Source: Mobula birostris (Eukaryota). From it: 64,000 nucleotides of DNA. Below are positions 5,365 to 60,041 of the stretch, piece after piece (positions within the stretch are counted from its first letter, which is position 1; every line of letters begins with the position of its first letter). The notes under the pieces are model-generated. The model did not search any database, was not told where the DNA came from, and worked only from the letters and a program-made list of their open reading frames with translations. Location: positions 4,593,079-4,657,078 of the forward strand of contig NC_092377.1 in NCBI RefSeq assembly GCF_030028105.1, read 5' to 3'. The position numbers and the translations under genes were made by a program.

Positions 5365-5727
5365 GTGTAAATGCAGGGACAGTCCTGATCCAATCACCAG
5401 GAGTTGTGAAGGTGCGTGAAGGTGGAACGGTGCAGATACAGTGTGACCTGCAGAGTGACAACGTGGATTACACTGTGGATAAATATGATGTACACTGGTA
5501 CGACTCACACAGTAAACTGACAGGTCATCATAATATACTTGGTCTTACCAGTACTGGCCATATTTACAGATCATGGCGCTTCTCCGATCGATTTCAGCTT
5601 TCCAGGAACGTCACCACTAACAGCTACTCACTGACCATCAGCAAGGTGAAGGTCACCGACCCTAAACTTTACATCTGTGGCATTTGGGGGTCGGTCTTTG
5701 GAAAGGGAACCCAGCTGAATGTGACCA
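5365..5727 (+). CDS. Exon V1: N-terminal V-set Ig domain with fused J segment
   Basis: Acceptor tttactgcccacag|GT, donor ACCA|gtgagt. Encodes (G)VNAGTVLIQSP...QIQC...DVHWY...DRFQLSR...SLTISKV..TDPKLYICGIWGSVFGKGTQLNVT, with B-strand Cys, C-strand Trp, F-strand Cys and FGxG. GVNA resembles the split-leader end seen in Ig V exons. Confidence 0.92.
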
Positions 5728-38700: not shown

Positions 38701-41700
38701 GTGAAGAAGATTCCCCTCATGTTCCCCTTAAACTTTTCACCTTCACCCTCAATCCATGTCATCCAGTGGTAGTCCCACCCAACCTCAGCAGAAAAAGTCT
38801 GTTTGCATTTACCCTATCTATACACCCCACAATTCTGTATACCTCTAGCAAACCTCCCTTCAATTTTCTACATTCTAAGGTATGAAAACCTAACCTATTA
38901 AATCTTTCCTCAGAGTTCAGGTCCTCTCGTCCTGGTGACATCTTTGAAAATCTCCTCTGTACTCTTTCAAACTTATTTATATCTTTCCTGACGAAAACTA
39001 CACACAATACTCGAAATTAGTACTCACCGGCATCCTATACCACTTCAACATAACATCCCATCTCCTGTACTCAATACTTTGATTTATAAAGACCAATGTG
39101 CTGAAAGCTGTCTTTATAATCCTAAACACCTGTGACGCCACTTCCAATGAATTATCAAACTGTATTCCCAAATCCCTTTGTTTCACCACACTCCTCAGTG
39201 TCCAGCCCTTGCACTTGTCTGGATTAAATTTTATCTGCCACTTTTCAGCCCATTTTTCCAGCTGGTCCAGATCCTACTGCAAGCTTTGATAGACTTCCCT
39301 GTTGTCCACTACACCCCTAGTCTTAGTGCCATATGTAAACCTTCTGATCCAATTAACCACATTATCATCGAGATCTTTTATACAGATGAAAAGTGACAAT
39401 GGACCCAGCACCGATCTCTGTGGCACTTCACTAGTCACAGACCTCCAGTCAGAGGGGCAACCATCTACCACCACTCTCTAACTTCTCCTACAAAACCAAT
39501 ATCTAAACCAATTTCAAACAAGGGAGAATCTGCAGATGCTGAAAGTCAAGTTAATACACACAAAATGCTGGAGGAACTCAGCAGGCCAGGCAACATCTAT
39601 GGAAAAGAGAAAGTCAACTTCTTAGGATGAGACCCTTCATCAGGACCAACTTACACTAATTGGACTAATCAAATTTACTACCTCATTTTGAATGCTGAGC
39701 GAGTGAACCTTCCGGACCACCCACCCATGCAGGAGCTTTTCAAAAGTCTTGCTGAAGTCCATGTAGACAACAACCACTGCCTTGCTTTCATCAACATTCC
39801 TGGTAACTTCCTTGAAAAACTCTATAAAGTTCATTAGACACAGCCTAACATGCACAAAACCATGCTGGCTATCCCAAATCAGATCATACCTATCCAAATA
39901 TTCATATATCCCATCCCTTAGAGTACCTTCCAATAACTTACGCACTTCTGATGTCCGGCTCACCTGTCTATAATTTCCTGGTTTATTTTCAGAGCCTTTC
40001 TGAAACAGTGGAACAACATTAGCTATCCTCCAATCCTCCAGTACTTCTCCGGTCACTAAGGATGATTTAAATCTCTCTCCTATCTGTTGCGGTTTCTGCA
40101 CTTGCCTCTCACAAGGTCTGGGGGAACACCTTGTCAGGTCCTGGTTGTCCCTTACAATCCTTCTGCTCCTAACATATCTGTAGAATCCCTTAGGATTCTC
40201 CTTCACCTTGTCTACTAGGATGAGCTCATGCCTTCTTTTATCCCTCTTGATGGCTAACATGAGAGGGCATAGGTTTAAGGTGCTTGGAAGTAGGTACAGA
40301 GGAGATGTCAGGGGTAGGTTTTTATGCAGAGAGTGGAGGGTGCATGGAATGCACTGCTGGCAGCGGTGGTGGAAGCAGATACAATCAGGTCTTTCAAGAG
40401 GTTCCTGGATAGGTACACGGAGCTTAGAAAAACAGAGGGCTGTGGATAACTTAAGGTAATTTCTAAAGTAAGTACATGTTCAGCACAGCATTGTGGGCCA
40501 AAGGGTCTGTATTGTGTTGTAGGTTTTCTATGTTTCTTTGAGTTTTCACAACCTACACCTGTTGGTTAAAATGAGAAAAATTCACTAACGTTGCAGAGGA
40601 GGTCATGATAGAAACTAGACAGGGTTACTGATGTTCAAACTTCAACTCATTCAGAACACCACTGCTGGACTTCTAAACAAAAACCAGGATGGAGAGCATA
40701 TCACTGAATCCTAGCTACTCAGCATTGGCTTCCTGTATCTACTAGAAATGATTTTAAAGTTCTCTTACTTGTTTTTAATGCTCTTAATGGTCTGAGACCG
40801 GAGTACCTCACAGAATCATTTTTGTTTAGTAATCCAGCTCAAGCTCTCTGGTCTTCTTCTGCTGGTCTCTTAAATTTAAACAATCTCCCTTAAAAGGTAA
40901 TTGGCAGATCACCTTTTTTGAACTATGTTCTTAAACTGTGGAATTCAGTTCCTAAAACGATAAGAATGCAGACTCAGTGGATGCCTTTAAACACCAGATC
41001 AAAACCCATTTACTTAACCATGCTTCTAATCTATTTTCATGATTATATTTATTTTTTATTTTCATCTTTGTGCTTTATCCCATTGTCGACATTTTCTGTA
41101 TGAAAAGTCCTCTTTAAATAAGTTATTACTATTATTTTTATTATTATTGGTCTCCACGATGTCTTTCCTTCGGTACAATAGCAGCACAGTAAGTCCATCC
41201 TTCACACGGCGCTCTCTCCCTTACTGACTGTTAATGAGATGTCTCAGGGAGAACTATCGGCCTCCAGTGTTCACATATTAAACCTGTCATTCAAAGGACA
41301 ATTCACATTACCAATGTTAAACTCTACCTCAATCTGTGTTATTTTTCAGAAGCAGATTACGGTTGGTCTTGGAAAGTCTTGGCCAGTATTCTCGCCGGTA
41401 TCCTCGTACTCGTCCTCTTATTCTGCATCTTAGTAACAACAATATGCTATGTGAAAAAACAGGCATGCTTTCAACAGAGATTGAAGCCAGAAGGGTAAAT
41501 AACATTTTATTTTGTATCTTCTTTCAATAATATTGAATCAAACATGGTTGGTAAAGGAATTGAATCTGAATGAAACAGTGGGAGAACACAGAAGCTCGAC
41601 CAGGATGTTGTCTGAGGTGAAGCAGTTCCGTTGTGAGGAGAGACTGGAGAAGCTGGGTCTGGTCTCCATTAGGCAGGGGAGCTCAAGGGGGACGATTGAG

Positions 41701-44700
41701 GTGTACAAAGTTATGAGGGACATATGTAAGGTATAGACTGCAGAAAACTCATCCCCATATCAGGGGTAGATAAAATTCGAGAACATGCTCTTAAGGTGAT
41801 TGGGAGGAGACTCAGAGGGGATGTGCCAGGGCCTCTTCAACCCGAGAGCAGGAATACCAGAACACACTGCCAGAGAGAGTGTCAGAAACTGGGTCACTGA
41901 CAGCACTAACAATGAACACTTAGGCAGAGAGGGCGATGGACAAGGTGCCAGATGATGGGGTTACTATGGAAGAGTCAGTATTGGTCGGCATGCAGTGCAA
42001 ACACATAAAATTACTGTAAATTCAAAATAAAAAGTGTGAAACAATGAATAACAAAACTGTCAATAGGCCATTCAGAAATCTGATGGCAGACTTTAGAAAC
42101 CATTTCTGAATCCCTAACCTTAACAAGTTTAAACAGGAAACACCAGGAGACTGTCTTACAAAGAGCAGATCGTTCAAGTAAAACACAAGGAACTCGAAGT
42201 GATTATAAAGTTTCATTAAACAACAATTAACCAATTCAGGTGCTTGAGAAACCTGGGAGCCCAGTGCTCTCCAGTGCCCCACACAGGCCAAAGAACTCAT
42301 TACAGACGGTGCTACAAGAGCCTGAAGACACACACTCAACATTTCAGGGACACCTTCACCTCTGCCATCAGATCTCTGAATGGGCAGTGAACCCTTGAAT
42401 TGTACCTCTATTTATTTTTTTCTTGCTCTGTTTTTGCACAACTTAGTTAACTTAAAATTATATATATACTTCTTATTGTAATTTATAGTTTATAATTATT
42501 ATGCATTGCAATGTATTGCTGCCACAAAACAACAAATTTCATGACATATGGCAGTGACATTACACCTGATGCTGATTCTCCCTGACGGGAGTAACAAGCA
42601 GGAAGATGTCTGGATGACATATGCCAGTGATATTAAACCAGATTCTGATTCTCCCTGACGGGAGTAACAAGCAGGGGGATGTCTGGGTGGTGAGGGTCCT
42701 GAATGGTGGATGCCGCCTTCTTGAGGCACTGCTTCTGTAATAGTCCTCGATGATGGGGATGGTTCTGTTCCCCAGCTGGCTGAGTCTACAACCCTCTTGC
42801 AATGTGTGTGTGTTGGAGCCTCTCTATCAGGCTGTTGTACAACGAGTCACAATGCTCTCCACCATCTCTCTGTAGAAATTTGCAAGAGCTTTTGGTGACA
42901 TACCAAATCTCCTCAAACTCCTATTTTCGTTGAACTGTTGGCATGTCCACTTCATGTTTGGATCAATGTGTTTATTTATTGAGATAAAGTGTGGAGTTGG
43001 CCCTTCCAGCCCTTTGAGCCACGCCACCCAACAAACCTCTAAATTTAATCCTAGCCTAGTCAGGGGATAATTTGCAGTGACCAATCCAATTCCATCAGGA
43101 GTATCAAAACGTATGTGAAACAGACAACTGCTACTTTCACAGAACTTCAATACACTGGAAAAGATAATCTGAATAATTTAACTTCTGGTAAAGTTGTCAA
43201 ATTGTTTTTAAGACATTAACAACTATCATATAGCTAATTCACTAACATTATCTTCACTGTTTACCCAGGTGCTCTACTGAATATCAGGAAACAGTGTATG
43301 CCACAGTCACAGGTAAAAAGTTCATTTCAGTGCTCATATTGAGAATTACTTCACATGATAGTTATGTTCAACAATGATTCCCAATGCAGGACAAGGGAGT
43401 AATCAATTGTTTCATCATCCTCAACAGCAACTCCAGTCCTGCCTTTTCACTCCTCTTCAATATATGCAGACAAATAAACATTCCTCATCCTCTGAAATAG
43501 AGAAGGATAAAGATTCAGAAGCCACATTAAAGAAAATTCTTCACAACTTTATCCTAACTTACTGACAGTCAGACCATACCAAGAGATTGAAATGGAATGA
43601 AAACCTCTACTCTTTTAAGATTTCAATTCCAATCAGATCTTGTATCGAAACAATCCAAACTTAAGCACTCAATATCTGCTTCAAATCAGAGGACAGCTTG
43701 CTCTAGGGCACTGTCACTGACTGGCATACAATTAATCTTGAGTTGACTTTTAAAAAATTCTCAATTCATGCACATTTTCTAAAGTTGGTTCCCATTAGTG
43801 CAAAATTAATAGCAGAAATTTCCCAAGAACAATAACATAAGATCATAAGATATAAGAGCAGACATACACTGATAAATCAATAATCTTTCAACCCCTGCCT
43901 TAAATATACATTAAACTTGGCATCCACAGCCACCCATGGCAACGGGTTCCACAGATTCACCACCCTCTGGCTAAAGAAATATCTCCTCATCTCCGTTCTA
44001 AAAGAACGCATGAGCAAAGACTTTCAAATTCTCATCCACTTGACCTTGGTTGAACTCAGACCTGTGATCATGAGTAAACTAAAGAACATACAATAAATTC
44101 TTTGATTAATCCTTTACTCCCAGTTGAAAAGTTTATGGAATAGCCAGCTGAAAGCAGCTTTGCATTGAAGCATTAGCCTGCAAGGTGCTGCACATGAGCC
44201 AAACAAAATGAGAGCCCGTGGTCTTACAGGACAGATACGGACATGGGTAGAGCATTGGCTGACTGGCTGGAGGCAATGGGTGGGAATAAAGGGAGCGTCT
44301 TCTGGTTGGTTGCCAGTAAATAGTGGTGTTCTGCAGGGTCTGTGTTAGGACCCCATCTTTCCACATTATATGTCAACAATTTGAATGAAGGAATTGATGG
44401 CTTACTGACCAATTTTGAGAACGATACAAAGATAAGTGGAGGGGCAGGTAGTGTTGAAGAAGAAGGGAGTCTGCAGAAGGACCTAGTCAGATAAGGAGAA
44501 TAGGCAAAGAAGTGGCAGATGAAATAGTGTCAGGAAGTGCATGGTCATGAACTTTGGTAGATGGAATAAAAGTTTAGACTATTTTCTAAACTGAGAGAAA
44601 AATCTGAATTCTGAGGCACAAAAGGACTTGGAAGTCCTTGTGCAGGATTCCCTAAAGCTTCATTTGCAGGTTGAGTCAGTGGTGAGGAAGGAAAATGTGA

Positions 44701-47700
44701 TGTTAGAATTTATTTCAAGAGAATCAGAATATAAAAACAAGGATACAATGCTGAAATTTCATAAAGCATTGGTCATATCACAATTGGAGTACTGTGAGCA
44801 GTTTTGAACCCTTTATCCAAGAAAGGATGTGCTGACATGGGAGAGAGCCCAGAGGAGATTCATGAGAACAATTCCAGACAAGAAAGGGATACTGAATGAG
44901 GAGCATTTGATTCCTCTGGGCTTATATTTGCTAGAGTTTAGAAAAATGAAGGGGGATCTCATTGAGGGGGAACGTGCTATCCTAGATCTGGTCCTGTAAA
45001 ATTAGTGAGACAGGTAAAATTAGTGATCTAGTAGTTAGGGACCCTCCTGGAATGAGTGATCACAGTATGACTGAGTTTCTGATACAAATGGAGGGTGCAA
45101 TAGTTTGATCTAAAACCAGTGAATTATACCTGAACAATGGAGACTACAATGGGATTTGGCTAGTGTCGACTGGGAACACTGGGCTAAATGGTGAGACAGC
45201 TGAGGAACAGATTTTACACGGAGCTCAGCAAAAGTGTATTCCAGTTAAAACCAAGCACAGTAAGGGTGGAAGAGCCAGCCTTTGATAGCTGAGGAAATAA
45301 AAGAAGGCATCAGACTAAAAGCACGTGCATAGAAAGTCACCAAGAGTAGTGGGAAACTGGACGATTGGGAAAACTTTAAAAAGCAACCAAGAACCTCTAA
45401 GGGAGCAATAAAGAAAGGGAAGCTAAATTATGAAAATAAACTTGCTCAAAATATAGAAACAGATAGTAAAAGTTTTTATAATTATATAAAGTGGAAAACG
45501 GTGTCTAAAGTGAATGTAGGTCCCTTGGAGGACAAGAAGGAGGAATCAATATTGGGTATTAAGAAATAGCTGAGGCTTTGAATGACTATTTTGTGTTGGT
45601 CTACATGGAGGAGGACATGTCTAAAATGAAAGATGTTATGGAAGCAATGGGAAGTGAGGCCCTCAGTACAATAGCTATCATTAAAGACATAGTGCTGAGC
45701 AAACTTATGGGCCTGAAGATGGACAAGCTCCCTGGTCCTGATGGAATGCGTCCCAGGGTACTGAAAGAAATAGCAGAAGTTATAGCAGAGGCTTTAGTGA
45801 TGATTTACCAAAATTCTCTGGACTATGGGCAGGTCCCAGCAGAGTGGAAAACAGTGATTGTCACGCCACTGTTCAAAAAAGGTTGCAGGCAAAAGGCAGG
45901 TAACTATTGGCCAGTTAGTTTAATATCTGTAGTTGGGAAAATGATTGAAGCTATCATTAAAGACGAAATATCGAGGCATCTGGAATGAAATGGATCCATC
46001 AGGCAGATGCAGCATGGATTCAGCAAAGGCAGGTCTTGTCTGACAAACTTACTGGAGTTCTTTGAGAATATAATGAGTTCAGAGGATAGAGGGGAACAGA
46101 TAGACATTACTTACTCGGATTTCTAGAAGGTGTTCGATAAGGTGCCACATAAAAGACTTATCCATAAGATAAGAATGCATAGAGTCGTGGTGATGTATTA
46201 GCATGGATAGAGAATTGGTTAACCAATAGAAAGTAGGGAGTTGGGGCACATGGGTGTTACTCTGGCTGGCAATCCGTGGTGAACGGTGTGCCGCAGGGTA
46301 CGGTGCTGCGCAAGCAATTGTTCAAGATATACATTAACAATCTGGTAGAGGGGACCGAGTGTAGTGTATCTAGGTTTTCTGATCACACTAAATTGAGTGG
46401 AAAAGCAAATTTTGCAGAGGAAACAGAGAGTCTGCAGAGAGCTATAGCTACGTTAAGTGAGTGGGCAAGGGTCTGGCAGATGGAGTACTACGTTGATAAA
46501 TGTGAGGTCATCCACTTTGGAAGAAAGAATGGAAGATAGGATTATTATTTAAATGGTGATAAATTGCAGCATGCTGTTGTGCAGAGGGACTTGGGAGTGC
46601 TTGTGCATGAATCGTAAAAGGTTGGTTTGCAGGTGCAGCAGACTACCAAGAAGGCAAATGGAACATTGGCCAGGGAACCAGGTTGAGGCCCATTGCATTT
46701 ATCAGCTATAGTCTGTCGCCCTCTGAGAAAAACTATCCCACGCACAAGCTGGAATATCTGGCGTTGAAATGGCCAGTGGTAGCTAAGCTGAGTGACTACC
46801 TCTACGGCGCCAAGTTTGAGGTGAGGATGGACAACAACCCCCTAACTTATATCTTGTCTTCAGTGGAAGTGGATGCCACAGGCCATCGGTGGTTGGCGGC
46901 GTTGTCTGCCTGTGATTTCAGCCTGAAATACTGGCCGGGAAGCAGGAACATCGATGCTGATGCTTTGTCCTGACGGGCGCACGAGGGACTGGACAGGATG
47001 AGGAGTGAGAGAGCGTTCCTGCCCCGGGGGTGAAGGCCATGTGTCAGTTTGCCATCACCGTGAAGGCAGAGGGAAAGGAGAGGCAGGATTGAGCGGTGGA
47101 TCAATTGGGAGCTTCTGTTGACACCATTCCCCAAGATTACCGTATCTTGACTGCTCTGAAGACAAATCAGCTGCCGGAATTGAGTTCTGGGGAAGTGGCA
47201 GCTGCTCAGCGAGATGACCCGGGCATTGGTACCATTTAGGCAACCGTCAAAAAGGGAGACATGGATCAGTTGGAGAAGACAAAACATGCATCGGTGCCTC
47301 CATTAGTGTGAGAGGTCCTGGATTCAAATCCCACAATTGTAACTCTCGGTTCGGCTACCGGCTTAATCTAAGTGATGATAGCCCCCGGCCCAGCCAAACT
47401 TAAGAAATCTCGTTTGAGTGGATGCTGAGTGATGTGTCCCCTGTTACAAATCAGTACCACGAGATAACAAATGGTACACAATAAGCGATTAAACAGTTGG
47501 GTTTTATAACTCTTAATTCAACTATATAGTTAGTAAAGAAACAGAAAAGAGAAAACAGCTCATTCTCATGAAACAGTCTATTGCGCTAACGTTGGAGCTC
47601 ACTGATAAGCCATTCGTCCACCATCGACCTCCGATCGTCACTGACCTTCGGACCCTCGCTTCAAGTCCAATCCATCCGGCAGTCTACCAACTCTCTCCAT

Positions 47701-50700
47701 TCGTATCTTCTCTCCTCATCTCTCCCCGGCAAAAAGCCCGTGAAATCCCTCTCCCAGACACACAAGAAAGAACAACATCCTGCTCGTTGGCTAACATGTG
47801 CCATTGTTTCCAGTCATCACCTAAACATTGCTGCTGCAGAGAAACCATTACCTTAGCAGTGAAACATTACAGCGTAGCAGTGAAACCTTTTCCAAGGTGT
47901 TACAGAGAAGGAAAAGTGGAAGATCAGATTGTTATTTAAATGGTAAAAAAAAATAGTAGCATGCTGCTGTGCACGGGGACTTGGGAGTGCTCGTACATGA
48001 CTCACAAAACGTTGGTTTGCAGGTGCAGCCGGCTATCAAGAAAGCAAATGCAATGTTGGCCTTCATTGCGAGAGGGATTGAATTTAAGAGCAGGGAGGTT
48101 AAACTGGAAATGTACAAGGTACTGTTGGAGCCACACCAGGAGTTCTTGTCTCCTTACTTGAGGAAGGATATACTGGCTTTGGTGCTGCTGCAGAGGAGGT
48201 TCAACAAGTTGATTCCAGAGATGAGGGTGTTAGACTATGAGGAGAGATTTAGTCGTCTGGGAGTGTACATGCTGGAATTCAGAAGAATGAGCGGAGATCT
48301 TATAGAAACATACAACTTTATGAAAGGGCTAGATAAGATAAAGGCAGGAAAGTTGGTTCCACTGGTAGGTGAGACTAGAACTAGGGGAAAAGCTTCAAGA
48401 TTCAGGGGAGTAGATCTAGGACAGAAATGAGGAGGAACTGCTTTTCCCAGACAGTGGTGAATCTATGGAATTCTCTGCCCAATGAAACAGTAGAGGCTAC
48501 CTCAATAGATATATTTAAAACAAGGGTGGATAGATTTTTGTATAGTAGGGGGAATTAAGGGTTACAAGGCAAAGCAGGTAGGTGGAGATGAGTCCATGGT
48601 CATATCAACCATGATCTTATTGAATTGCAGAACAGGCTCGACAGGCCAGATAGCCTCCTCCTGCTCCTATTTCTTATGTTCTTATGAAACCTATCAAATA
48701 TTGAAAGGCCTCGCTAGAGTAGACGTGGAGACGATGCTTCCTCCCTAGACTTCCGAGGGAGCCTTGGACCAGAGGGCATAATCTCAGGATAGGAGGATGT
48801 CTCTTTAGAACAGACGTGAGGAGGAATTTCTTAAGTCTGAGGTGATGAATTTGGAGAATTTATTGCCACAGACCTTCGTGGAGGACAAGTCATTGGGTGT
48901 ATTTAATACAGAGCTGTGAAGATTTTGATCAGTAAAGGTATTAAAGATTATGGGGAGAAGGCAGGAGAACGGGGTTGAGAGGGATAATAAATCAGCCATG
49001 ATGGAATGTGAAGTAGACCTGATGAGTTGAATAGCCTAATTCTGCTCCTCTGTCTTATGGTTTACACTTTTATAAGGCTTGATGCAGCCTGAATAACACA
49101 AAAGCAATCAACTCTGAGTCACGTGTGAGTCTTGCTTGCCATGCCCCTGTGGAGGCTCTGATGGGAAATGCTTCACATGGCATGTTCTGCAGTTTGCTGT
49201 CCCTGTCTGAATGCACCTGCTAAGGGTGAATTGAAGACCATTCATCACAATGTGATTTCAGTTCAATTATCATTCTTGTGTTGCAACTCTCAAACAAATT
49301 CTCATTTTATTTCAGCTGAAACCGAGGTGAATACACAGGCAGCCACAAATGTTACTGCGGTAAGTAACCTTCTTCAATATAACATTGAGGAATGTTTTCC
49401 ATGAACACTTTTACTTCCTAATAAATCAGGTATTGAAAGTCTGTTAGATAAACACCATTACTTCCTCTTTGACATTTAATTCAGACACTAATATGAATTA
49501 GCAGTAGGAACAGGCCCTTCCACCCCACTGTTATAAGACTATTTCTACTCTCCTATACTCACCTCTACTTTCTGAGGAGGCTGAAGAGAGCTGGACTTTG
49601 CACATCCATACTCACATCATTCTACAGATGTACAGTAGGGGCCATCCTAACAAACTGCATCACTGCGCGGTACAGAAACTGCACTGCTGCAGACAGGAAC
49701 AATCTACAACAGGCAGTCCAAACTATCCAACACATCGCCAGCACCAGCTACCCTCCATCAAGGACATAGATACAGAAAGGTGCTGGAACAGGGCCAGTAA
49801 CATCATGAAGGATCCCACCCACCCTGCTCGTGGACTGTCAGGGAGGAGGCTATGTAGCATCCACACCAGGACCTCCAGATCCAAAAACAGATACTTTCCC
49901 CAAGCAGAAAGACTGATCAACACCTCCACCCACTAACCCACCCCTGCACACCCCCAACCACCACTACTTTATCATTTCCTGTCAGTCACCTTATGTGCAG
50001 ACAGTCCTGTGCCTGACCTCACTTTATGGACATACAATCAATCTATGTATATAAGCTATTTATATAAGTATTTATATTTATTGTATATTTTTATTGGTGT
50101 GTTCTTTATCTTCTTGTGTTTTTGTGCTGCGTCAGATACAGAGTAACAATTATTTCGTTCTGCTTCACACTAGTGAAATGGAAAAGATATTGAACAATTT
50201 TGAATCTTGAAAGGATACCCTGTAGGATAGACTCTTAACCCACAATCTACCTCGTTAAGACCTTGTACCCTATTGTCTGCCTGCACTGCACTCTCTCTGT
50301 GACTGGCACACTTCATTCTGCACTCTGTTATTGGTTTATTTTGTCCTACTTCAGTGCACTGTGGTAATGATTTGATCTGTATGAACAGTGTTCAAGTTCT
50401 TCACTCTACCTCAGTACATGTGGCCAAGATAAACCAGTTTAACAATTTACCCTCAGACCTGCCCTGTTGTTTATTAAGGTCACAGTGGTTCAATTGTAAC
50501 TGCAACTCCATAATCCCATCTCCTCCAGTGACTTTTCTTCCCTTTGCTTATCAGGAATCCATCTCTTTCTCTTTTAAAGACTGAAAGGCTCTTCTTCCAG
50601 TGTCCTATCAGGAAGAGAGATCCAAAAACTCAACCATCAGAGAGAGAAAATAAAATCACCTCTCTCCAAATAAAATGGACGACTCTTATTTTTAACCAGT

Positions 50701-53700
50701 GATGCTAATTCTGGATACCCTTTCAAAGCTAAAGTAAATTTATTATCCAAGTCCCCAAAACAATCCCGAGATTCATTTTCTTGCAGGCATTCACAGTAAA
50801 TACAAAGAAACACTGTGGAATCAGTGACAAACCGTTCACAAGCTGGACAAACAACCAAAGTGTAAAAGACAACAAACAGTGGAAATACAAAAAGAGAGGG
50901 ATAAAAATAAAATAATAATAATAATAATAATAAGTAAGCAAGAAATATTCAGAACATAAGTTGGAGAGTCCTTGAATTTGAGTCTCTATGTTGTGGGATC
51001 AGTTCAGTGAGATTTTGAGTCATGTTCAAAGGAACATCTTGCCTGTCAAAATCCTTCTCTCTTCAAAACAGAAGCTCACCTGGTGAGTCCCACCTTTCCT
51101 GGTGAGACAGCATGCCCGTTCCCAGTTTTATCCTGGTTAACCTTTCCTGGACTATTCCCATCCTTCTGTAAACAGAGACCAGGTTTGAACACTGAACTCG
51201 GCACGGTAGTGTAGTGGTTAGCAAAACGTTTTACAGTACGTGCGACTTGGGTTCAATTCCCACCGCTGTGGGAGTTTGAATGCTCTCCCCATGACCTTGT
51301 GGGTTTCCCCAGGTGCTCTGGTTTCCTCCCACAGTCCAAAGATGTACCGGTTAATAGGTTAATTGGTCATTGTAAATTGTCCTGTGATTGGGCTGGAGTT
51401 AAATAGGTGGTTGCTGAGTGTCACGGTCGAGGGGCCTATTCTGTGCCGTATTGCAATTTTGTAAAAAACTCCACGTGTAAATTGTTCTGAGACAAACTAT
51501 TCTGAGGTATAACCTTGCAGGGAAACATTCAGCAAATGTCATTCAGATTTATTTATCAATGTACATCAAAACATACATTAACAACCAACACACCCAAGGA
51601 TGTGCTGCGACAGCTTGCAAGTGTCGCCACGTATTTGGCGCCAACACAACCAGCCCACAACGTTCAACAGAACTCAGTTCAAGTTCATGGTCATCTGACT
51701 GTACACGGATACAACCAAATGAAACAATGTTCCTTCGAACATACGTGTATCACAGCACATAAAACCAAATATTACCATCAATACGTTAATAAAATATCAT
51801 TCAATATGCATGTAGAGCACAGCACAGGTAAACAGTAAACAGTACACTGTCCTGGTGATGAGACCTCAGTGGTGACAGGGTATTCATTAGTCTCACAGCC
51901 TGAGGGAAGAAGCTGTTACCCAGTCTGACAGTCCCAGTCCTGATGCTCCTGTCCCTTCTTCCTGACCGTAGTGGGTCAAAGAGATTGCGGGATGGGTGGT
52001 GGGGACCCTCAACAATGCTTCAAGCTCTTCATCTGCAACACTCCCAGGAAATGTCACAAATAAGGGGGAGGGAGACTCCGATGATCCTCTTGGCAGTTTT
52101 CACTATAGTCTGCAGGGCCTTGCGGTATGATGCCTTGCAGCTTCCGTACTACACGGTGATGCAGTCAGACAGGACACTGAATGACACAATAGCAACAAGA
52201 CAACAGCAAAACAAGCTCCTTTTCCACCCTCTCATCCCCTTACATACCCATGCTAACAACCCCAGGATAGGCCACCTCTGTGCCTCCAGTATTGGCTCCA
52301 GAATCTCATGCTGACAACCCCAGGAAAAGCAGCCTCCAGTCCCTTGGTCCCGGACTCTCAATTTCCCGTCTCTGGGCCATATGCACAGACTCGACCTTTG
52401 GTCCTCTACCTCAGTAGTCATTGACTTCGGTCTTCACCTTTTGGGCTTTCTACTTCTGAACTTGAACCACTGGGGATAAATTCACTTGCCCCATCACTGA
52501 ACTGTTCCCACAAGCTATGGGCTCACTTTCGAGGACTCTTCACCTCAAGGTCTAATCTGCAGCTTGGTTCTTGTCCCTCCTGTGGGGTGAGGTCTTTCAT
52601 TGACTCTGTTTTGTTTCCTTGTATTTTCTGTGAATGCCCACAAAAGAATGAATCTCAGGGTTGTATATGGTGACATATATGTTCTACAGCATGTTGCCGT
52701 TGTTGAGTGCTGTCATCAACGACTCATGGTAACCCTAAGGATAGTGTACTTGTCCATAGAGTTTTCGTGGCAAGATAGGGAAGTAGATTTCCAGGCCTTT
52801 CTTCTTCACAGATATGCTGCTGCCCAGGTTGGGACCTGGCTTTAAATGAGATGTGAGCATTTAGCACACTTAGAAATCTGGCTAATAGCTATAAATCTCT
52901 GCCTGAGATAGTTTTGGAGTCAGATACAATACGTTTTAGAGACATTTAAACAGGCACTCAAATATATAAGGCAGAGAGAGATATGGAACAGACGGGGACC
53001 AATTGAATTCAGTCGATCGGGAAAAGATCAGCATGGCCGTATTTCCCTGCTGTATGACTCGACGACTGCACGAGATGAAAGGGAGGTGTCGGATTCCAAT
53101 GTTTTAACCCAAAGTTCCTTTGGAAGCCAGGAAATAGGCCCAAAACCTGTTGCTTCGAGATTGCTTTATTAAGCCCTTATAGAACAAAGAGACCTGGAAA
53201 TGTAGAATTGCATAGTAATCTGCCCATCACCTACACCTTCTCCCTCTGGTTCCCCAGCCTTTATTCTGCCCATCACCTACACCTTCTCCCTCTGGTTCCC
53301 CAGCCTTTATTCACAGTCTACTATCCTTTCCTATCAGATTCCTTCTTCTTCAGTCTCTTGCTCCTTCCACCTATCACTTCCCAGCTTCTCACATCATCCC
53401 TTAACCCCCACCTCCACCTCTCTCACCCTCCCCTCTAACCTGGACTCACCTGTCACCTGCCATCTTGTGTTCCTCCATCTCCCTTCTACCCTTTTTATTC
53501 TGGCTTCTGCCCTCTTCCTTCCCAGCCCCGATGAAGAGTTCATGAGCTAAAACATTGGCTGTTTATTCCTCTCCATAGATGCTGCCTGAACTAATGAATT
53601 CCTCCAGGATTGTGTGTGTGTCGCTTCAAACTAATCGCATCGTCAGTATCTCTGGTGTCTAAGATCCCTGAGGTTACAACAGAAACTGTGTGTTTAGTAG

Positions 53701-53910
53701 CCAAATGTAGCAATGTCCTGTGGGGATGGGTCAGATATAAACCAGGGGTGAGTGGTTTGTTTCAGTACTGTAAACGTCTGTGTTTTTCTGTTCCAGTCAG
53801 AGCAATCAGAGATATTTTATGCTGATATTCAGTTCCTACGGCAGAACGCAGCTCCAAGAGTCAAAGTCATTGAGGAAACAACCGAATATGCTGTCATCAA
53901 ACGTACCTAG
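5365..53910 (+). CDS. Spliced gene model (9 visible coding exons): type I membrane receptor with five germline-joined VJ Ig domains, TM and ITSM/ITIM/ITSM tail; leader exon not found in window
   Basis: Exons 5365-5727, 11503-11847, 14057-14404, 28295-28639, 35253-35600, 41350-41494, 43269-43312, 49316-49359, 53797-53910. Each has an AG acceptor and each non-terminal exon a GT donor. Phases chain 1-1,1-1,1-1,1-1,1-1,1-2,2-1,1-0,0-stop with no stop at any junction; 2096 nt in total. Joining all five V exons in one mRNA is inferred. Confidence 0.8.
6170..6930 (-). mobile_element. CR1 LINE 3' RT fragment
   Basis: ORF 6369..6992 has KANAMLAFISRG...RPHLEYC.QFW.P..RKD...LER.QRRFT. Confidence 0.85.
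8685..9188 (+). mobile_element. Penelope-like insertion with inverted 5' RT piece, GIY-YIG tail and pLTR; 16-bp TSD
   Basis: TSD aagagcaggg(a/g)tgaga at 8669-8684 and 9189-9204. 8760-8834 encodes EQHLIYCLGSLQPLGMNIEFSNFW*. The reverse complement of about 8685-8752 encodes TPSERTALHSLRTNPNLAIAK (PLE RT-upstream motif). Confidence 0.85.
9098..9135 (+). ncRNA. Minimal type I hammerhead ribozyme motif (G12 mutated)
   Basis: cagtc-CTGATGA-a-ggg-ttccgg-ccc-AAAA-c-GTC-gactg. Perfect stem I, CUGAUGA core, GUC cleavage triplet, palindromic ACGT stem III; GAAA reads AAAA. Confidence 0.65.
11503..11847 (+). CDS. Exon V2: V-set Ig domain with fused J segment
   Basis: Acceptor ttctcccttacag|GT, donor ACCA|gtgagt; 345 nt, phase 1-1. 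Encodes VLVQSP...WLCC...DVHWYRKLPGQ...DSAVYYCRVWGDIHGNGTQLIVT. Confidence 0.92.
12725..13110. mobile_element. Probable solo LTR (TG...CA, 386 bp, 4-bp TSD ctct), present only in unit A
   Basis: ctct|tgttgc...aaaatca|ctct; no counterpart at the homologous region near 29150 in unit B. Confidence 0.55.
14057..14404 (+). CDS. Exon V3: V-set Ig domain with fused J segment, heavily N-glycosylated
   Basis: Acceptor catatccaacacacag|AT, donor ACTG|gtaagt; 348 nt, phase 1-1. Encodes VLVQDP...VQLHC...DVHWYHQRPG...DTAVYNCRVWSYIYGGGTQLNVT. Confidence 0.92.
16840..18665 (+). mobile_element. CR1 LINE (EN remnant, RT, 3' tail) inserted into the ERV integrase
   Basis: ORFs 17180..17506 and 18019..18507 carry CR1 RT motifs; ERV IN sequence resumes on both sides. 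Confidence 0.85.
20333..20638 (-). mobile_element. Young CR1 3' fragment inserted into the ERV RT, 10-bp TSD
   Basis: TSD tgtgattcat at 20323-20332 and 20639-20648; nearly identical to the CR1 3' end at about 55520-55820. Confidence 0.88.
21339..22007 (-). mobile_element. Non-autonomous hAT-like DNA transposon, 13-bp TIR, 6-bp TSD
   Basis: TIR cagacatcccacc / ggtgggatgtctg; TSD cttttg at 21333-21338 and 22008-22013. Internal KRKY...YPCL...HCTVCNSDFS zinc-finger-like remnant; interrupts ERV gag. Confidence 0.72.
22616..22637 (-). promoter_or_regulatory. Primer binding site complementary to the tRNA-Asn(GUU) 3' end
   Basis: Minus strand TGACATCCCTGGGTGGGTTCGA vs expected TGGCGTCCCTGGGTGGGCTCGA (19/22), 4 nt from the LTR end. 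The reference tRNA sequence is from memory. Confidence 0.7.
23475..23512 (+). ncRNA. Minimal hammerhead ribozyme motif in a short Penelope pLTR fragment (about 23434-23570)
   Basis: tagtc-CTGACGA-a-ggg-tcttgg-cct-GAAA-c-ATC-gactg. CUGANGA and GAAA intact; stem III G>A. Confidence 0.6.
23800..24890 (+). mobile_element. CR1 LINE RT fragment
   Basis: WKIANLTPV.QKGG...NYRPVSLTSVVGK, DDAKIGG and KANA.LAFI motifs, with frameshifts. Confidence 0.85.
24890..25977 (-). mobile_element. Rex1/Babar-type LINE 3' part with (CATAGT)n tail
   Basis: GAPQGTVLSPFLFTIY.SD...QKFSDDSAIVG (25675..26031) and FYESVVASAI...WG...HPLH...SFLPVAIKLYNS (25057..25428); microsatellite at about 24890-24922. Confidence 0.75.
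28295..28639 (+). CDS. Exon V4: paralog of V2
   Basis: Same acceptor and donor context as V2; 345 nt, open. 24 nt and 15 aa differences from V2 (counted by hand). Ends DSADYYCRVWGDIDGNGTQLIVT. Confidence 0.9.
29544..34521 (-). mobile_element. Gmr1-type Ty3/Gypsy LTR retrotransposon (gag-PR-IN-RT-RH order), degenerate
   Basis: LTRs at 29544-30271 and about 33811-34521; TSD ggtg; PPT aaaggagggagg; tRNA-Pro PBS at 33788-33805 (16/18). Gag with CYFCKKPGHVASNC. The IN zinc finger (31566-31790) lies upstream of RT (LPFGMKNAP..YIDD, 30830-31294) and RNase H (30401-30628). Confidence 0.88.
35253..35600 (+). CDS. Exon V5: paralog of V3
   Basis: Same splice context as V3; 348 nt, open. 6 nt and 4 aa differences from V3. 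Ends DTAVYNCSVWSYIYGGGTQLNVT. Confidence 0.9.
35976..38405 (-). mobile_element. Internally deleted Ty3/Gypsy element (gag plus protease only)
   Basis: 194-bp LTRs at 35976-36169 and 38212-38405; 5-bp TSD atgtg; PBS tggtgtcagaag (tRNA-Leu-like) at 38200-38211; PPT at 36170-36182. Gag YERYNF..DRIVCGI, CCHC knuckle, protease FKLDTGAQVN. Confidence 0.9.
37117..37350 (+). mobile_element. tRNA-derived CORE-type SINE inserted in the Gypsy element
   Basis: A-box-like tggccaagtggttaagg; CORE-like tgtgcccttgagaaaggcacttaac; 11-bp TSD ctact(t/c)ctgca. Confidence 0.7.
38500..40540. mobile_element. Cluster of CR1 fragments (mainly minus) with a Penelope pLTR fragment at about 39520-39650
   Basis: ORFs 38535..39474 and 39640..40260 carry CR1 motifs; degenerate hammerhead motif on the minus strand at 39612-39647. 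Confidence 0.75.
40560..41140 (+). mobile_element. L2 LINE 3' fragment
   Basis: About 40708-40815 reads ILATQHWLPVSTRNDFKVLLLVFNALNGLRPEYLTE, the L2 C-terminal HWLP motif. Confidence 0.7.
41350..41494 (+). CDS. Transmembrane exon
   Basis: Acceptor tgtgttatttttcag|AA, donor AGG|gtaaat; phase 1-2. Reads (E)ADYGWSWK-VLASILAGILVLVLLFCILVTTICYV-KKQACFQQRLKPE(G): 26 uncharged, mostly hydrophobic residues (41376-41453) followed by a KK stop-transfer signal. Confidence 0.88.
43269..43312 (+). CDS. Cytoplasmic exon 1 with ITSM (TVYATV)
   Basis: Branch-like cactaac at 43240, acceptor tgtttacccag|G, donor CAG|gtaaaa; 44 nt, phase 2-1. Encodes CSTEYQETVYATVT. Confidence 0.82.
44130..46665 (+). mobile_element. 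Two adjacent degenerate CR1 LINE fragments
   Basis: PGPDGMRPRVLKEIA...NYWPVSLISVVGK (45578..45988) and GVPQG (46276..46539). Confidence 0.8.
46670..47300 (+). mobile_element. Ty3/Gypsy RNase H fragment
   Basis: SLSPSEKNYPTHKLEYLALKW...DNNPLTY...HRWLAALS..DFSLKY.PG..NIDADALS. Confidence 0.85.
47338..47904. mobile_element. Probable solo LTR (TGTAAC...GTTACA) flanked by a tRNA-Pro-like segment
   Basis: 6-bp inverted termini; adjacent 47303-47332 resembles the 3' half of tRNA-Pro (gagaggtcctggattcaaatccc). Confidence 0.5.
47905..49065 (+). mobile_element. CR1 LINE 3' fragments
   Basis: ORF 47969..48430 has KKANAMLAFIARG...; ttatgttctt-type tails. Confidence 0.8.
49316..49359 (+). CDS. Cytoplasmic exon 2 (spacer)
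   Basis: Acceptor ctcattttatttcag|CT, donor GCG|gtaagt; 44 nt, phase 1-0. Encodes (A)ETEVNTQAATNVTA and exactly bridges the phases of its neighbours. Confidence 0.75.
49570..50200 (+). mobile_element. Rex1/Babar-type LINE 3' end
   Basis: LPSIKDIDTERCWNRASNIMKDPTHP...RTSRSKNRYFPQAERLIN. Confidence 0.75.
51200..51455 (+). mobile_element. V-SINE (HE1-like) element
   Basis: tRNA-like head (tagtgtagtgg A box, gggttcaattccc B box) and V-domain core gggtttcc..ggtgctctggtttcctcccacagtccaaaga. Confidence 0.75.
53200..53620 (+). mobile_element. Penelope pLTR fragment with an internal 46-bp tandem duplication and a degenerate hammerhead motif (53523-53561)
   Basis: Pyrimidine-rich pLTR; 53220-53265 repeated at 53266-53311; cagcc-CCGATGA...AAAAc-ATT-ggctg. 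Confidence 0.65.
53797..53910 (+). CDS. Terminal cytoplasmic exon with ITIM (IFYADI) and ITSM (TEYAVI)
   Basis: Acceptor tgtttttctgttccag|TCA; phase 0. Encodes SEQSEIFYADIQFLRQNAAPRVKVIEETTEYAVIKRT-TAG; ITIM at 53812-53829, ITSM at 53881-53898. Confidence 0.86.
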   Translation, partial: SEQSEIFYADIQFLRQNAAPRVKVIEETTEYAVIKRT

Positions 53911-53940
53911 TGACTAAAAATAATTCTTCAGCAGCAGGTT

Positions 53941-53946
53941 ATTAAA
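53941..53946 (+). promoter_or_regulatory. Candidate polyadenylation signal ATTAAA (alternative AATAAA at 54436-54441)
   Basis: Hexamer 30 nt after the stop codon; positional evidence only. Confidence 0.3.
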
Positions 53947-54685
53947 TAAGTGTGTGCTTCTTGCTGGTAACTATCAGCACACGGGAGTCCAGAACATCAC
54001 ACCTTCTCAACTTCCGTCAACTACAACACGATTGTTAGGGCAATTAATTTGCTCAGGATTTTCAATTAAAGTTGGTCACTAATGAATTGGACACGGACTG
54101 TGAAGTGACTAGAGAATAACGCATTCAAGAATCAAGGAGGAGTGACTCACTAACGGTGTGATTGTCAAGTCTTTCAAAGAACAATAGTCACAGCCTTTTT
54201 TATATCTGCGCACAGAAAGTCAATTACATCAATCAAAGTTCAAAAAGTCACTCCTGTGCGTTTTATCCATTCCCACGAAAATGCCAAAGATGGTCTCTTG
54301 TCTGCCCACAACACATAGAGATAGGTTGTCAGAACATACTTCAAACTAAGATAGACTATTGCAAGCATGCTGAGAACCCTGGCCAAATGATGAGTCTTTA
54401 TTAGAACACTCAGTCCTCTTTTATTGTCATTTAGAAATAAATACATGCATTAAGAAATGATACAATGCTCCTCTGGAGAGATATCACAGAAAACAGGACA
54501 AAGCAAAGACTAACACTGACAGAACCACATAATTATGACATATAGTTACAGCAATGCAAAACAATACCATAATTTGATAAAGAACAGACCATGGGCATGG
54601 TAAAAAAGAAATCTCAAGTCCCAATCGACTCCCGAGTCCCCGATAGCAGGCAGCAAAATGGAGAAACTCCCTGCCATAAACCTCT

Positions 54686-60006: not shown

Positions 60007-60041
60007 CTTGCGAGGGGGATGGGACCCAGAGTGATAGAGCA

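What the first reader, a model, noticed from the sequence alone, without database searches (positions are those of the whole stretch)
43269..53910. 80-aa cytoplasmic tail with ITSM-ITIM-ITSM built from three micro-exons over 10.6 kb
The predicted tail is KKQACFQQRLKPEGCSTEYQETVYATVTAETEVNTQAATNVTASEQSEIFYADIQFLRQNAAPRVKVIEETTEYAVIKRT. TVYATV and TEYAVI fit TxYxxV/I (ITSM) and IFYADI fits the ITIM consensus. The distal tyrosines are 23 residues apart, similar to the spacing that engages tandem SH2 domains of SHP-1/SHP-2 in PD-1, Siglecs and SIRP-alpha. An extra membrane-proximal ITSM could allow SAP/EAT-2-type switching. Skipping either 44-nt exon shifts the frame, so splicing could remove the distal motifs.
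Basis: partly seen in the sequence, partly recalled or inferred. Interest (0 to 1): 0.72.

Follow-up and report, generated by a model that had tools for sequence, protein, structure and literature searches.

The report
Manta ray inhibitory receptor tail
The predicted 80-residue tail is real: it is the end of an expressed, already auto-annotated but unstudied giant manta ray immune-receptor gene, and its "off-switch" tyrosine motifs are conserved across sharks and rays, so it is a sound but fairly ordinary inhibitory receptor.

Summary
Confirmed. The window is Mobula birostris contig C9:4593079-4657078. The transmembrane (TM) exon (41350-41494) and three small exons (43269-43312, 49316-49359, 53797-53910) have canonical splice sites.

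RNA-like contigs show the exon 3 to exon 4 junction and the 3'UTR of this copy. They also show an exon 2 to exon 3 junction from a paralogue.

The gene has a leader 12.8 kb upstream of the window, five tandem germline-joined VJ-type V domains, an uncharged TM and the tail.

Five more inhibitory tail copies and at least seven copies with a built-in ITAM lie interleaved over 1.5 Mb of the same contig.

In 31 distinct tails from sharks and rays:
- The middle (xxYADI) and distal (TEYAxI) tyrosines are invariant and sit 23-24 residues apart.
- The proximal TVYATV tyrosine is kept in 25 of 31.

Most likely this is a SHP-1/SHP-2-recruiting inhibitory member of a paired receptor family. Biochemistry is untested. 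SAP switching is speculation. Tail-less and truncated isoforms are annotated in relatives.

The scan has already found this unnamed family on neighbouring DNA (s1-145052, s1-145170 and others). I found no paper on it in the held library.

The parts
5365..5727 (+). V exon 1 (type A VJ domain, ...CGIWGSVFGKGTQLNVT), phase 1-1
   Evidence: Pfam V-set E=3e-11. Splice sites read. Residues 226-346 of XP_072122946.1. The leader exon MFAAIITTLTLSVCAV|GTAAGT lies 12,835 nt upstream of the window start.
11503..11847 (+). V exon 2 (type B VJ domain, ...CRVWGDIHGNGTQLIVT)
   Evidence: Pfam V-set E=6e-13. Read.
14057..14404 (+). V exon 3 (type C VJ domain, ...CRVWSYIYGGGTQLNVT)
   Evidence: Pfam V-set E=4e-15. 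Read.
28295..28639 (+). V exon 4 (type B, duplicate of V exon 2; 93.7% nt identity)
   Evidence: Present in the RefSeq model and in the M. hypostoma orthologue.
35253..35600 (+). V exon 5 (type C, duplicate of V exon 3; 97.9% nt identity)
   Evidence: The AlphaFold model has pLDDT 93.5 and a V fold, with best Swiss-Prot AFDB matches to Ig VH/VL and CD8 beta.
41350..41494 (+). Transmembrane exon: EADYGWSW, an uncharged TM (KVLASILAGILVLVLLFCILVTTICYV) and the juxtamembrane KKQACFQQRLKPEG. Read-through of its donor gives a stop straight after PEG.
   Evidence: K1, K2, F6 and Q7 are invariant in 24 aligned tails.
43269..43312 (+). Cytoplasmic micro-exon 2 (44 nt): CSTEYQETVYATVT, the proximal ITSM-type motif TVYATV
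   Evidence: The exon and both splice sites are conserved in five paralogues. A paralogue's copy is seen spliced to exon 3 in run X2.
49316..49359 (+). Cytoplasmic micro-exon 3 (44 nt): AETEVNTQAATNVTA, a linker without tyrosine
   Evidence: A GT..AG joint leads to 53797.
53797..53910 (+). Terminal coding exon: SEQSEIFYADIQFLRQNAAPRVKVIEETTEYAVIKRT plus stop. It holds the ITIM IFYADI and the distal ITSM TEYAVI.
   Evidence: A contig in X1 covers 53797-53900, preceded by the end of exon 3.
53911..54432 (+). 3' untranslated region (at least to 54432)
   Evidence: A 476-nt contig at 53957-54432 with 0-1 mismatches is present in all four RNA-like runs.

Best explanation
Window positions 43269-53910 hold the last three coding exons of an expressed giant manta ray gene, RefSeq XP_072122946.1. 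Its true length is about 714 aa.

The protein is a type I membrane receptor. It has a signal peptide, five tandem non-rearranging VJ-type V domains (types A-B-C-B-C), an uncharged transmembrane helix and an 80-aa cytoplasmic tail.

The tail carries a membrane-proximal TVYATV motif and a distal pair, IFYADIQF and TEYAVI, 23 residues apart.

Inferred mechanism:
- After ligand engagement near an activating receptor, Src-family kinases phosphorylate the distal pair.
- The doubly phosphorylated pair docks the tandem SH2 domains of SHP-1/SHP-2-type phosphatases, as in PD-1, SIRP-alpha and PECAM-1.
- The phosphatase then damps the activating signal.

The gene is the inhibitory half of an elasmobranch multigene family. 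Its other half has near-identical V domains joined to a tail with its own ITAM.

Shown: exons, splicing of exon 3 to exon 4, expression, motif conservation, and the paired family.
Inferred: phosphorylation, phosphatase recruitment, and inhibition.
For: Gene model:
- Canonical splice sites and an open frame.
- Identity to the RefSeq protein.
- A 90% identical 714-aa orthologue in M. hypostoma with the same A-B-C-B-C-TM-tail order.

Transcripts:
- The GT..AG joint 49359->53797, exon 4 and 3'UTR contigs.

Conservation:
- Six tail copies on contig C9 all keep TVYATV, xxYADI and T/AEYA(V/I)I, although overall tail dN/dS is 0.3-1.2.
- In 24 aligned tails Y51, A52, D53, F56, E69, E70, Y74, A75 and K78 are invariant.
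- In 31 distinct tails from rays and sharks Y2 and Y3 are kept in 31 of 31, with spacing 23-24.
- The 18 motif columns are more conserved than the other tail columns (mean entropy 0.59 against 1.29 bits).

Resemblance to PD-1:
- The distal pair matches the PD-1 consensus (I/V)(D/E)YG(E/V)L(D/E)F ... (T/V)EYATI, including Phe at +5.

Paired family:
- No charged residue in the TM.
- At least seven ITAM-type TM/tail exon sets (YMALx7YGHL) are interleaved with the six inhibitory copies at C9:3.6-5.1 Mb.
- Ectodomain domains of ITAM and inhibitory forms are 94-100% identical within a species.
Against: - No biochemical evidence of any kind. Tyrosine phosphorylation, the binding partner, the ligand and the expressing cell type are all unknown.
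- The strict ITIM consensus is met by the middle motif in only 17 of 31 tails. Many ray copies have Met or Cys at -2.
- The proximal tyrosine is lost in 6 of 31 tails.
- The TM->exon 2 and exon 2->exon 3 junctions of this exact copy were not seen in reads. The TM-exon words were held only weakly by the RNA-like runs (share 0.09 in X1 and X3).
- The runs are only guessed to be RNA.
Confidence: 0.75

Rival explanations
1. The tail is not mainly inhibitory. Its TxYxx(V/I) motifs would work as SLAM-type switch motifs that recruit SAP/EAT-2-like adaptors, giving a co-stimulatory or context-dependent output.
For: Two motifs fit TxYxx(V/I). The distal one fits strictly in 28 of 31 tails.
Against: - The distal ITSM is always paired with an upstream YADI motif at a fixed 23-24 residues. 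That is the ITIM-ITSM geometry of PD-1-type phosphatase recruitment, not the repeated ITSMs of SLAM receptors.
- The extra proximal motif, which the switching idea relies on, is the least conserved (Y kept in 25 of 31).
- I did not test whether SAP/EAT-2 genes are present in this genome.
- The family already has dedicated ITAM-bearing activating partners.
Confidence: 0.1
2. The three tyrosines serve chiefly as YxxPhi endocytic or sorting signals (AP-2 binding) that control surface level, not phosphatase recruitment.
For: All three motifs also fit Yxx(hydrophobic).
Against: - Sorting signals need neither the conserved -2 residue (T or a hydrophobic one), nor the invariant A at +1, D at +2 and F at +5, nor a fixed 23-24-residue spacing between two tyrosines.
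- The family context of paired ITAM partners points to signalling.
- The two roles do not exclude each other.
Confidence: 0.07
3. The gene is a true SIRP-alpha (PTPNS1), NKp30/NCR3, CEACAM or NITR family member that has simply been misnamed.
For: - NCBI's automatic names for shark orthologues include 'tyrosine-protein phosphatase non-receptor type substrate 1-like'.
- The V domains have a J-like GxGTxLxV motif, as SIRP-alpha, NKp30 and NITR do (my knowledge of those three families).
- The YADI ... TEYAxI pair resembles SIRP-alpha's ITYADL ... TEYASI (my knowledge).
Against: - In the window's gene the ectodomain consists only of V-set domains, with no C1/C2-type domain exon.
- The canonical V-domain cysteines are present, unlike CEACAM N domains.
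- The TM has no charged residue.
- MHC class I exons lie on contigs C6 and C4593, not on C9.
- A profile of the tail found only elasmobranch proteins among 1.84 billion representatives.
- The best structural matches are Ig VH/VL and CD8 beta, not NKp30 or SIRP.
Confidence: 0.05
4. This copy is a decaying or non-functional duplicate, and the motifs are only inherited remnants.
For: - Overall tail dN/dS among paralogues is high (0.3-1.2).
- The family is turning over quickly.
- The RefSeq model carries a doubtful 208-aa N-terminal extension.
Against: - All ten coding exons are open with intact splice sites.
- Transcripts of this very copy exist.
- The M. hypostoma orthologue is intact and 90% identical.
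Confidence: 0.03

Closest known systems
PD-1 (PDCD1) cytoplasmic ITIM-ITSM module
   Same: - An ITIM-type tyrosine is followed about 24 residues later by TEYA(T/V)I. PD-1's Y223 and Y248 are 25 apart; here the distance is 23-24.
- Phe at +5 of the first tyrosine is conserved in both ((I/V)(D/E)YG(E/V)L(D/E)F against IFYADIQF).
- PD-1 is present in sharks (PMC12151841).
   Different: - PD-1 has one V domain and no proximal third motif.
- It is a single-copy gene of the CD28 family.
- The tail profile did not retrieve PD-1.
SIRP-alpha / SIRP-beta paired receptors
   Same: - A J-motif-bearing N-terminal V domain.
- A tail with YADL/I plus TEYAxI pairs at similar spacing.
- Inhibitory and activating members with similar ectodomains.
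- NCBI auto-names some shark orthologues 'PTPNS1-like'.

The SIRP tail sequence is cited from my own knowledge.
   Different: - The ectodomain here is 1-5 tandem V domains with no C1-set domains.
- The activating partners carry their own ITAM instead of a charged TM residue that pairs with DAP12.
- No detectable tail homology.
CEACAM1 / CEACAM3-type paired receptors
   Same: - ITIM/ITSM tail against a cis-ITAM(-like) tail on similar ligand-binding domains (PMC5112662).
- The tail is encoded by several very small exons.
- In mammalian CEACAM1, from my knowledge, skipping a small cytoplasmic exon shifts the frame and yields a short tail without ITIMs. This is the same logic as skipping the 44-nt exons here.
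   Different: From my knowledge, CEACAM N domains lack the canonical disulfide and are followed by C2-type domains. Here every domain is a disulfide-bearing VJ-type V domain.
Teleost novel immune-type receptors (NITRs)
   Same: Large, fast-evolving clusters of germline-joined V(J) receptors with ITIM-bearing inhibitory and activating forms, functionally likened to KIRs (PMC3031540; details from my knowledge).
   Different: - NITRs are known from bony fish and typically have V plus I-type domains, with activating forms using a charged TM residue.
- This family is so far elasmobranch-only by tail profile.
- It has up to five V domains and cis-ITAM partners.
Shark NCR3/NKp30 family and UrIg/UrIg2 (other non-rearranging VJ genes of elasmobranchs)
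   Same: A single-exon, non-rearranging VJ domain in cartilaginous fish (PMC12227049).
   Different: - NCR3 and UrIg are MHC-linked, and UrIg/UrIg2 have C1 domains (PMC12227049).
- This cluster is on contig C9, while the class I genes are on C6.
- It has no C domains and has an uncharged TM.

Membership tests
ITIM/ITSM-bearing inhibitory IgSF receptors (functional class) | Type I membrane protein with Ig-type ectodomain and a TM without a charged residue | tested here: met
   Five V-set exons. The TM KVLASILAGILVLVLLFCILVTTICYV has no charged residue.
ITIM/ITSM-bearing inhibitory IgSF receptors (functional class) | Cytoplasmic (S/I/V/L)xYxx(I/V/L) and/or TxYxx(V/I) motifs (definitions as quoted in PMC12151841) | tested here: met
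   TVYATV, IFYADI and TEYAVI in this copy. Across 31 tails the strict consensus holds in 21, 17 and 28 respectively.
ITIM/ITSM-bearing inhibitory IgSF receptors (functional class) | Evolutionary conservation of the tyrosines | tested here: met
   Y2 and Y3 are kept in 31 of 31 distinct shark and ray tails, Y1 in 25 of 31.
ITIM/ITSM-bearing inhibitory IgSF receptors (functional class) | Phosphorylation-dependent recruitment of SHP-1/SHP-2/SHIP and inhibition of ITAM signalling | not testable with these tools
   Needs phosphopeptide binding and cell assays.
Paired activating/inhibitory receptor family | Closely similar ectodomains joined to opposite signalling tails, encoded in one gene cluster | tested here: met
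   Six inhibitory and at least seven ITAM-type tail exon sets lie at C9:3.6-5.1 Mb. Type C domains of ITAM and inhibitory forms are 94-96% identical in Hemitrygon and Hypanus, and the M. hypostoma isoforms are 100% identical over 250 aa.
SIRP family | V - C1 - C1 ectodomain | tested here: not met
   All five ectodomain exons are V-set with a J motif, and there is no C-type exon.
SIRP family | Detectable homology of the cytoplasmic tail | tested here: not met
   A tail profile against 1.84 billion representatives returned only elasmobranch proteins plus two unrelated repeat proteins.
NCR3/NKp30 family | Linkage to the MHC (stated for shark NCR3 in PMC12227049) | tested here: not met
   All 23 MHC class I domain matches are on contigs C6 (174.9-180.2 Mb) and C4593. 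None is on C9.
NCR3/NKp30 family | Single VJ domain and a charged TM residue for adaptor pairing (mammalian NKp30; my knowledge) | tested here: not met
   Five V domains and an uncharged TM.
CEACAM family | N-terminal V-like domain without the canonical disulfide, followed by C2-type domains (my knowledge) | tested here: not met
   C27 and C100 are invariant in 29 aligned V domains. No C2-type domains are present.
Rearranging antigen receptors (Ig/TCR) | V exon separated from J by recombination signal sequences | tested here: not met
   V and the J-like GxGTQLxVT are contiguous in one exon in all five V exons, although the fold and sequence are closest to Ig VH/VL and TCR V.

The most novel reading that the evidence does not exclude
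The tail belongs to an undescribed, elasmobranch-restricted system of paired receptors. These are built only from tandem antigen-receptor-like, non-rearranging VJ domains (one to five per chain, four domain types).

Under this reading:
- A PD-1-like ITIM(+5 Phe)-ITSM module has been fixed since before sharks and rays diverged.
- Tail-less or truncated isoforms, made by donor read-through or by skipping the 44-nt exons, tune inhibitory strength.

This would make it a cartilaginous-fish counterpart of KIR/NITR/SIRP systems, assembled from the kind of V domain that gave rise to antibodies.
Probability: 0.3. Interest if true: 0.6.

Novelty: new member of a known kind. Interest (0 to 1): 0.42.

Why it matters
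Paired activating and inhibitory Ig-superfamily receptors (KIR, LILR, SIRP, CEACAM, NITR) are a recurring solution in vertebrate innate immunity.

This gene shows that rays and sharks run such a system with chains made purely of tandem, non-rearranging antibody-type VJ domains. The inhibitory half uses an ITIM-ITSM pair very like that of PD-1, conserved across sharks and rays.

It gives a concrete, sequence-defined target for testing SHP-1/SHP-2/SHP-2L recruitment in cartilaginous fish. It also gives a target for asking what ligands such multi-V receptors see.

For the tail alone the result is confirmatory rather than surprising. The gene is already a RefSeq model, the motif logic is textbook, and the scan has already met this family on neighbouring DNA.

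Tried and rejected
- **Literature.** The shark NCR3-family paper I recalled (tried under a DOI recalled from memory) and Flajnik 2012 (PMC3709836) are not held. Searches for NS344823, NCR3 plus ITIM, shark plus ITIM plus ITSM, MDIR, and elasmobranch paired receptors found no description of this family. So "undescribed" holds only for the held library.
- **UrIg/UrIg2** (PMC12227049) were considered and rejected because they have C1 domains.
- **MDIRs** were considered and set aside. They are CD300/TREM/pIgR-like, not VJ-type.
- **Leader exon.** Not in the window. It was found 12.8 kb upstream.
- **ITAM-type exons.** None in the window, nor in the 20 kb upstream or the 10 kb downstream.
- **Second run search on the TM exon with flanks.** The RNA-like runs X1 and X3 hold only 0.09 of the words, so expression of the TM exon of this copy is inconclusive.
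- **PDB sequence search.** The top hits for both V domains searched were antibody-type Fv constructs, so it cannot rank NKp30 or SIRP.
- **Alternative splicing between ITIM and ITAM tails** (M. hypostoma LOC134350038 X1/X2). The search of M. birostris returned no + strand ITAM-type match closer than about 228 kb upstream of the paralogue at C9:4.98 Mb whose tail best matches X1. I treat it as unproven and possibly an annotation merge.
- **Complex prediction with SHP SH2 domains** was not run. Phosphotyrosine cannot be modelled, and a spliced manta SHP sequence has no reference.
- **First Pfam calls** failed on a mistyped reference and a wrong frame and were repeated.
Full report
**1. Observation**

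All pieces of the predicted tail are on the + strand.

Reading the DNA gives these exons:
- A 145-nt transmembrane exon, 41350-41494 (acceptor TTTTTCAG|, donor GG|GTAAAT).
- Two 44-nt exons, 43269-43312 (CCCAG| ... CACAG|GTAAAA) and 49316-49359 (TTTCAG| ... GCG|GTAAGT).
- A terminal coding exon, 53797-53910 (TTCCAG| ... TAG).

Joined in phase, they translate to EADYGWSW, then the TM, then KKQACFQQRLKPEGCSTEYQETVYATVTAETEVNTQAATNVTASEQSEIFYADIQFLRQNAAPRVKVIEETTEYAVIKRT*.

A pattern for ITIM/ITSM-type motifs hits three times (TVYATV, IFYADI, TEYAVI). Among 200,000 shuffles of the same 80 residues, three or more hits occur at a frequency of 4e-4. The distal tyrosines are 23 residues apart.

**2. 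Transcripts**

Four small runs of the same organism held about half the words of 53400-54400. That is what an exon plus 3'UTR would give.

Laid on 49000-54900, their contigs show:
- A GT..AG joint from 49359 to 53797 in X2 and X4.
- Loose ends in X1 that read the start of exon 4 behind 49359 and the end of exon 3 before 53797.
- A 117-nt X1 contig whose first 13 letters are the exon 3 end and whose remainder is 53797-53900 with two mismatches.
- A 476-nt contig on 53957-54432 in all four runs.

The paralogous terminal exons differ by about 10%. They would fail the 95% threshold, so these contigs come from this copy.

One X2 contig running into exon 3 is preceded by AAGATTTGAACACAGTGTATGCCACAGTTA(CAG). 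That is the exon 2 of the paralogues at C9:3.62 and 3.74 Mb. An exon 2 to exon 3 junction is therefore seen directly, but for a paralogue.

Two cautions apply. The runs are only guessed to be RNA. And a second run search on the TM exon with its flanks showed only a 0.09 share in X1 and X3, so expression of the TM exon of this copy is not shown.

**3. The gene**

The contig length of 170,995,155 bp and the protein hits identify the genome as Mobula birostris. The window is C9:4593079-4657078.

Five single-exon V-set domains lie upstream on the same strand, all in phase 1-1. Each ends in a J-like GxGTQLxVT:
- 5365-5727 (type A)
- 11503-11847 (type B)
- 14057-14404 (type C)
- 28295-28639 (type B)
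- 35253-35600 (type C)

The leader exon MFAAIITTLTLSVCAV|GTAAGT lies 12,835 nt before the window start.

Its first 208 residues have no Pfam match. They are also absent from the 714-aa M. hypostoma orthologue LOC134350035 X1, which is 90% identical over 713 residues. I take them as an annotation artefact.

The V domains are closest in sequence and predicted fold to rearranged Ig VH/VL, TCR V and CD8 beta. However, V and J are contiguous in the germline.

**4. The family**

Search of the manta genome with the terminal exon found six copies, all on C9 between 3.62 and 4.98 Mb. I fetched 20 kb upstream of each. All five paralogues have exon 2, exon 3 and exon 4 in the same order with conserved splice sites.

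A second tail type is present in at least seven copies interleaved in the same 1.5 Mb. It reads ...ADYENV...NTYMALQRPTQSIYGHL, a canonical YxxLx7YxxL ITAM, behind an uncharged TM. None of these copies lies in the window.

Within a species, type C domains of ITAM and inhibitory forms are 94-96% identical (Hemitrygon, Hypanus). Two annotated isoforms of one M. hypostoma gene share 250 identical N-terminal residues but carry opposite tails. This is a paired activating/inhibitory receptor family.

Models with the same inhibitory tail exist in:
- Rays: Hypanus, Hemitrygon, Pristis, Leucoraja, Rhinoraja, Narcine and both Mobula species.
- Sharks: Heterodontus, Hemiscyllium, Chiloscyllium, Stegostoma, Rhincodon, Carcharodon, Scyliorhinus, Pristiophorus and Heptranchias.

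These models carry one to five V domains of four types.

A profile of 24 tails, searched against 1.84 billion representative proteins, returned only elasmobranch receptors plus two unrelated repeat proteins. At HMMER sensitivity the tail is therefore not detectably related to SIRP-alpha, PD-1 or any bony-vertebrate receptor.

**5. Conservation of the motifs**

In the 24-sequence alignment these positions are invariant:
- K1, K2, F6 and Q7 (juxtamembrane).
- V23 and V27.
- E48, Y51, A52, D53 and F56.
- E69, E70, Y74, A75 and K78.

Across 31 distinct tails:

| Motif | Tyrosine kept | Strict consensus met |
|---|---|---|
| Proximal (TVYATV) | 25 of 31 (H, S or D otherwise) | ITSM 21 of 31 |
| Middle (xxYADI) | 31 of 31 | ITIM 17 of 31 (rays often have M or C at -2) |
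| Distal (TEYAxI) | 31 of 31 | ITSM 28 of 31 |

Y2-Y3 spacing is 23 or 24 in every aligned tail where both could be located. Y1-Y2 spacing is 24-27.

Among the six manta paralogues overall tail dN/dS is 0.3-1.2. Constraint is therefore concentrated in the motifs, not spread over the tail. Mean column entropy is 0.59 bits in the 18 motif columns, against 1.29 bits in the other tail columns beyond position 14.

The extra tyrosine in STEYQE is seen only in this copy, its M. hypostoma orthologue and the C9:4.98 Mb paralogue, among the tails examined.

**6. Mechanism**

The distal pair IFYADIQF ... TEYAVI closely parallels the PD-1 consensus across jawed vertebrates, (I/V)(D/E)YG(E/V)L(D/E)F ... 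(T/V)EYATI. The match includes the Phe at +5. [quoted passage not shown]

An uncharged TM, a conserved ITIM-ITSM pair at fixed spacing and ITAM-bearing sister genes make one reading the best supported: phosphotyrosine-dependent recruitment of a tandem-SH2 phosphatase.

That step, the kinase, the ligand and the cell type are all inferred, not shown.

That motif is the least conserved, and I could not test it.

**7. Isoforms**

Consequences of alternative splicing, computed:
- Skipping exon 2 gives ...KPEG*. Reading through the TM-exon donor gives the same product.
- Skipping exon 3 gives ...TVYATVTVRAIRDILC*, which keeps only the proximal motif.
- Skipping the TM exon together with exon 2 (189 nt) stays in frame and would give a soluble protein.

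Annotated models of each kind exist in relatives:
- M. hypostoma LOC134350035 X2 ends ...RLMPEG (P0045).
- A Hemitrygon isoform ends after exon 3 (P0022).
- An M. birostris paralogue isoform joins a V exon directly to exon 3 (P0036).

They are computed gene models, not verified transcripts.

**8. Comparison and membership**

- By function it resembles PD-1 (tail module), SIRP-alpha/beta and CEACAM1/3 (paired receptors; PMC5112662) and teleost NITRs (PMC3031540).
- It is not a SIRP, because it has no C1 domains and no tail homology.
- It is not NCR3/NKp30 or UrIg. It has five V domains, no C1 domains and no charged TM residue. All 23 MHC class I domain matches are on contigs C6 and C4593, not on C9 (PMC12227049).
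- It is not a CEACAM, because the canonical cysteines are invariant.

**9. Earlier notes of this scan**

The same unnamed family was already reported on neighbouring DNA of this contig:
- s1-145052: four V domains plus an inhibitory tail, 943 kb upstream. This probably corresponds to the paralogue I located at C9:3.62 Mb.
- s1-145170: an ITAM form 77 kb downstream. It matches my ITAM hit at C9:4,735,903.
- s1-145117, s1-145053, s1-145054, s1-145055 and s1-145041.

Those agents likewise found no paper. My results were obtained before I read them, and they agree.

**10. Verdict**

- It is a new, unnamed member of a well-known kind, an ITIM/ITSM inhibitory receptor of a paired family.
- It is already present in RefSeq as an uncharacterized protein.

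Noticed in passing
G000:C9 3.87-5.14 Mb (outside the window; nearest copy C9:4735903-4736272, about 79 kb beyond the window end): At least seven copies of an alternative TM/tail exon set encode an uncharged TM and a built-in ITAM (NTYMALQRPTQSIYGHL) plus a YENV site. They are interleaved with the six inhibitory tail copies and are the activating partners of this family.
   Followed up: partly
window 11503-14404 and 28295-35600: The B-C pair of V exons is duplicated within the gene (93.7% and 97.9% nt identity; dN/dS 0.72 and 0.55). The five-domain A-B-C-B-C order is shared with M. hypostoma. Both B copies of M. birostris read WLCCTM where both copies of M. hypostoma read WLWCTM, which hints at gene conversion between the duplicated exons.
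   Followed up: partly
P0038 residues 1-208 (upstream of window; leader exon at window position -12835): The RefSeq model XP_072122946.1 carries a 208-aa N-terminal extension that reads through the 5' side of the leader exon. It has no Pfam match and is absent from the 714-aa M. hypostoma orthologue, so it is probably an annotation artefact.
   Followed up: partly
window 59982-62051 (+): A 690-aa open frame with endonuclease (Exo_endo_phos) and reverse transcriptase domains, i.e. a LINE-type retrotransposon downstream of the gene. Many shorter RT-like frames on both strands fill the introns (for example 6372-7049 on the - strand and 54974-55726 on the + strand).
   Followed up: partly
window 2385-2771 and 6936-7322: Two stretches carry identical 84-aa (+) and 90-aa (-) open frames. 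They are a repeated element or local duplication upstream of V exon 1.
   Followed up: no
P0002 and P0015 (Mobula hypostoma LOC134350038 isoforms X2 and X1): One annotated gene is given two isoforms with identical first 250 residues but opposite tails (ITAM against ITSM-ITIM-ITSM). If real, one gene would make both an activating and an inhibitory receptor by alternative splicing. It could also be a merge of neighbouring genes.
   Followed up: partly
P0048, P0049 (Chiloscyllium punctatum, Scyliorhinus torazame): Single-V-domain shark receptors carry a diverged version of the same tail (for example NPVYATV ... KYAELRF ... AEYAVV). This suggests an older one-domain subfamily.
   Followed up: no
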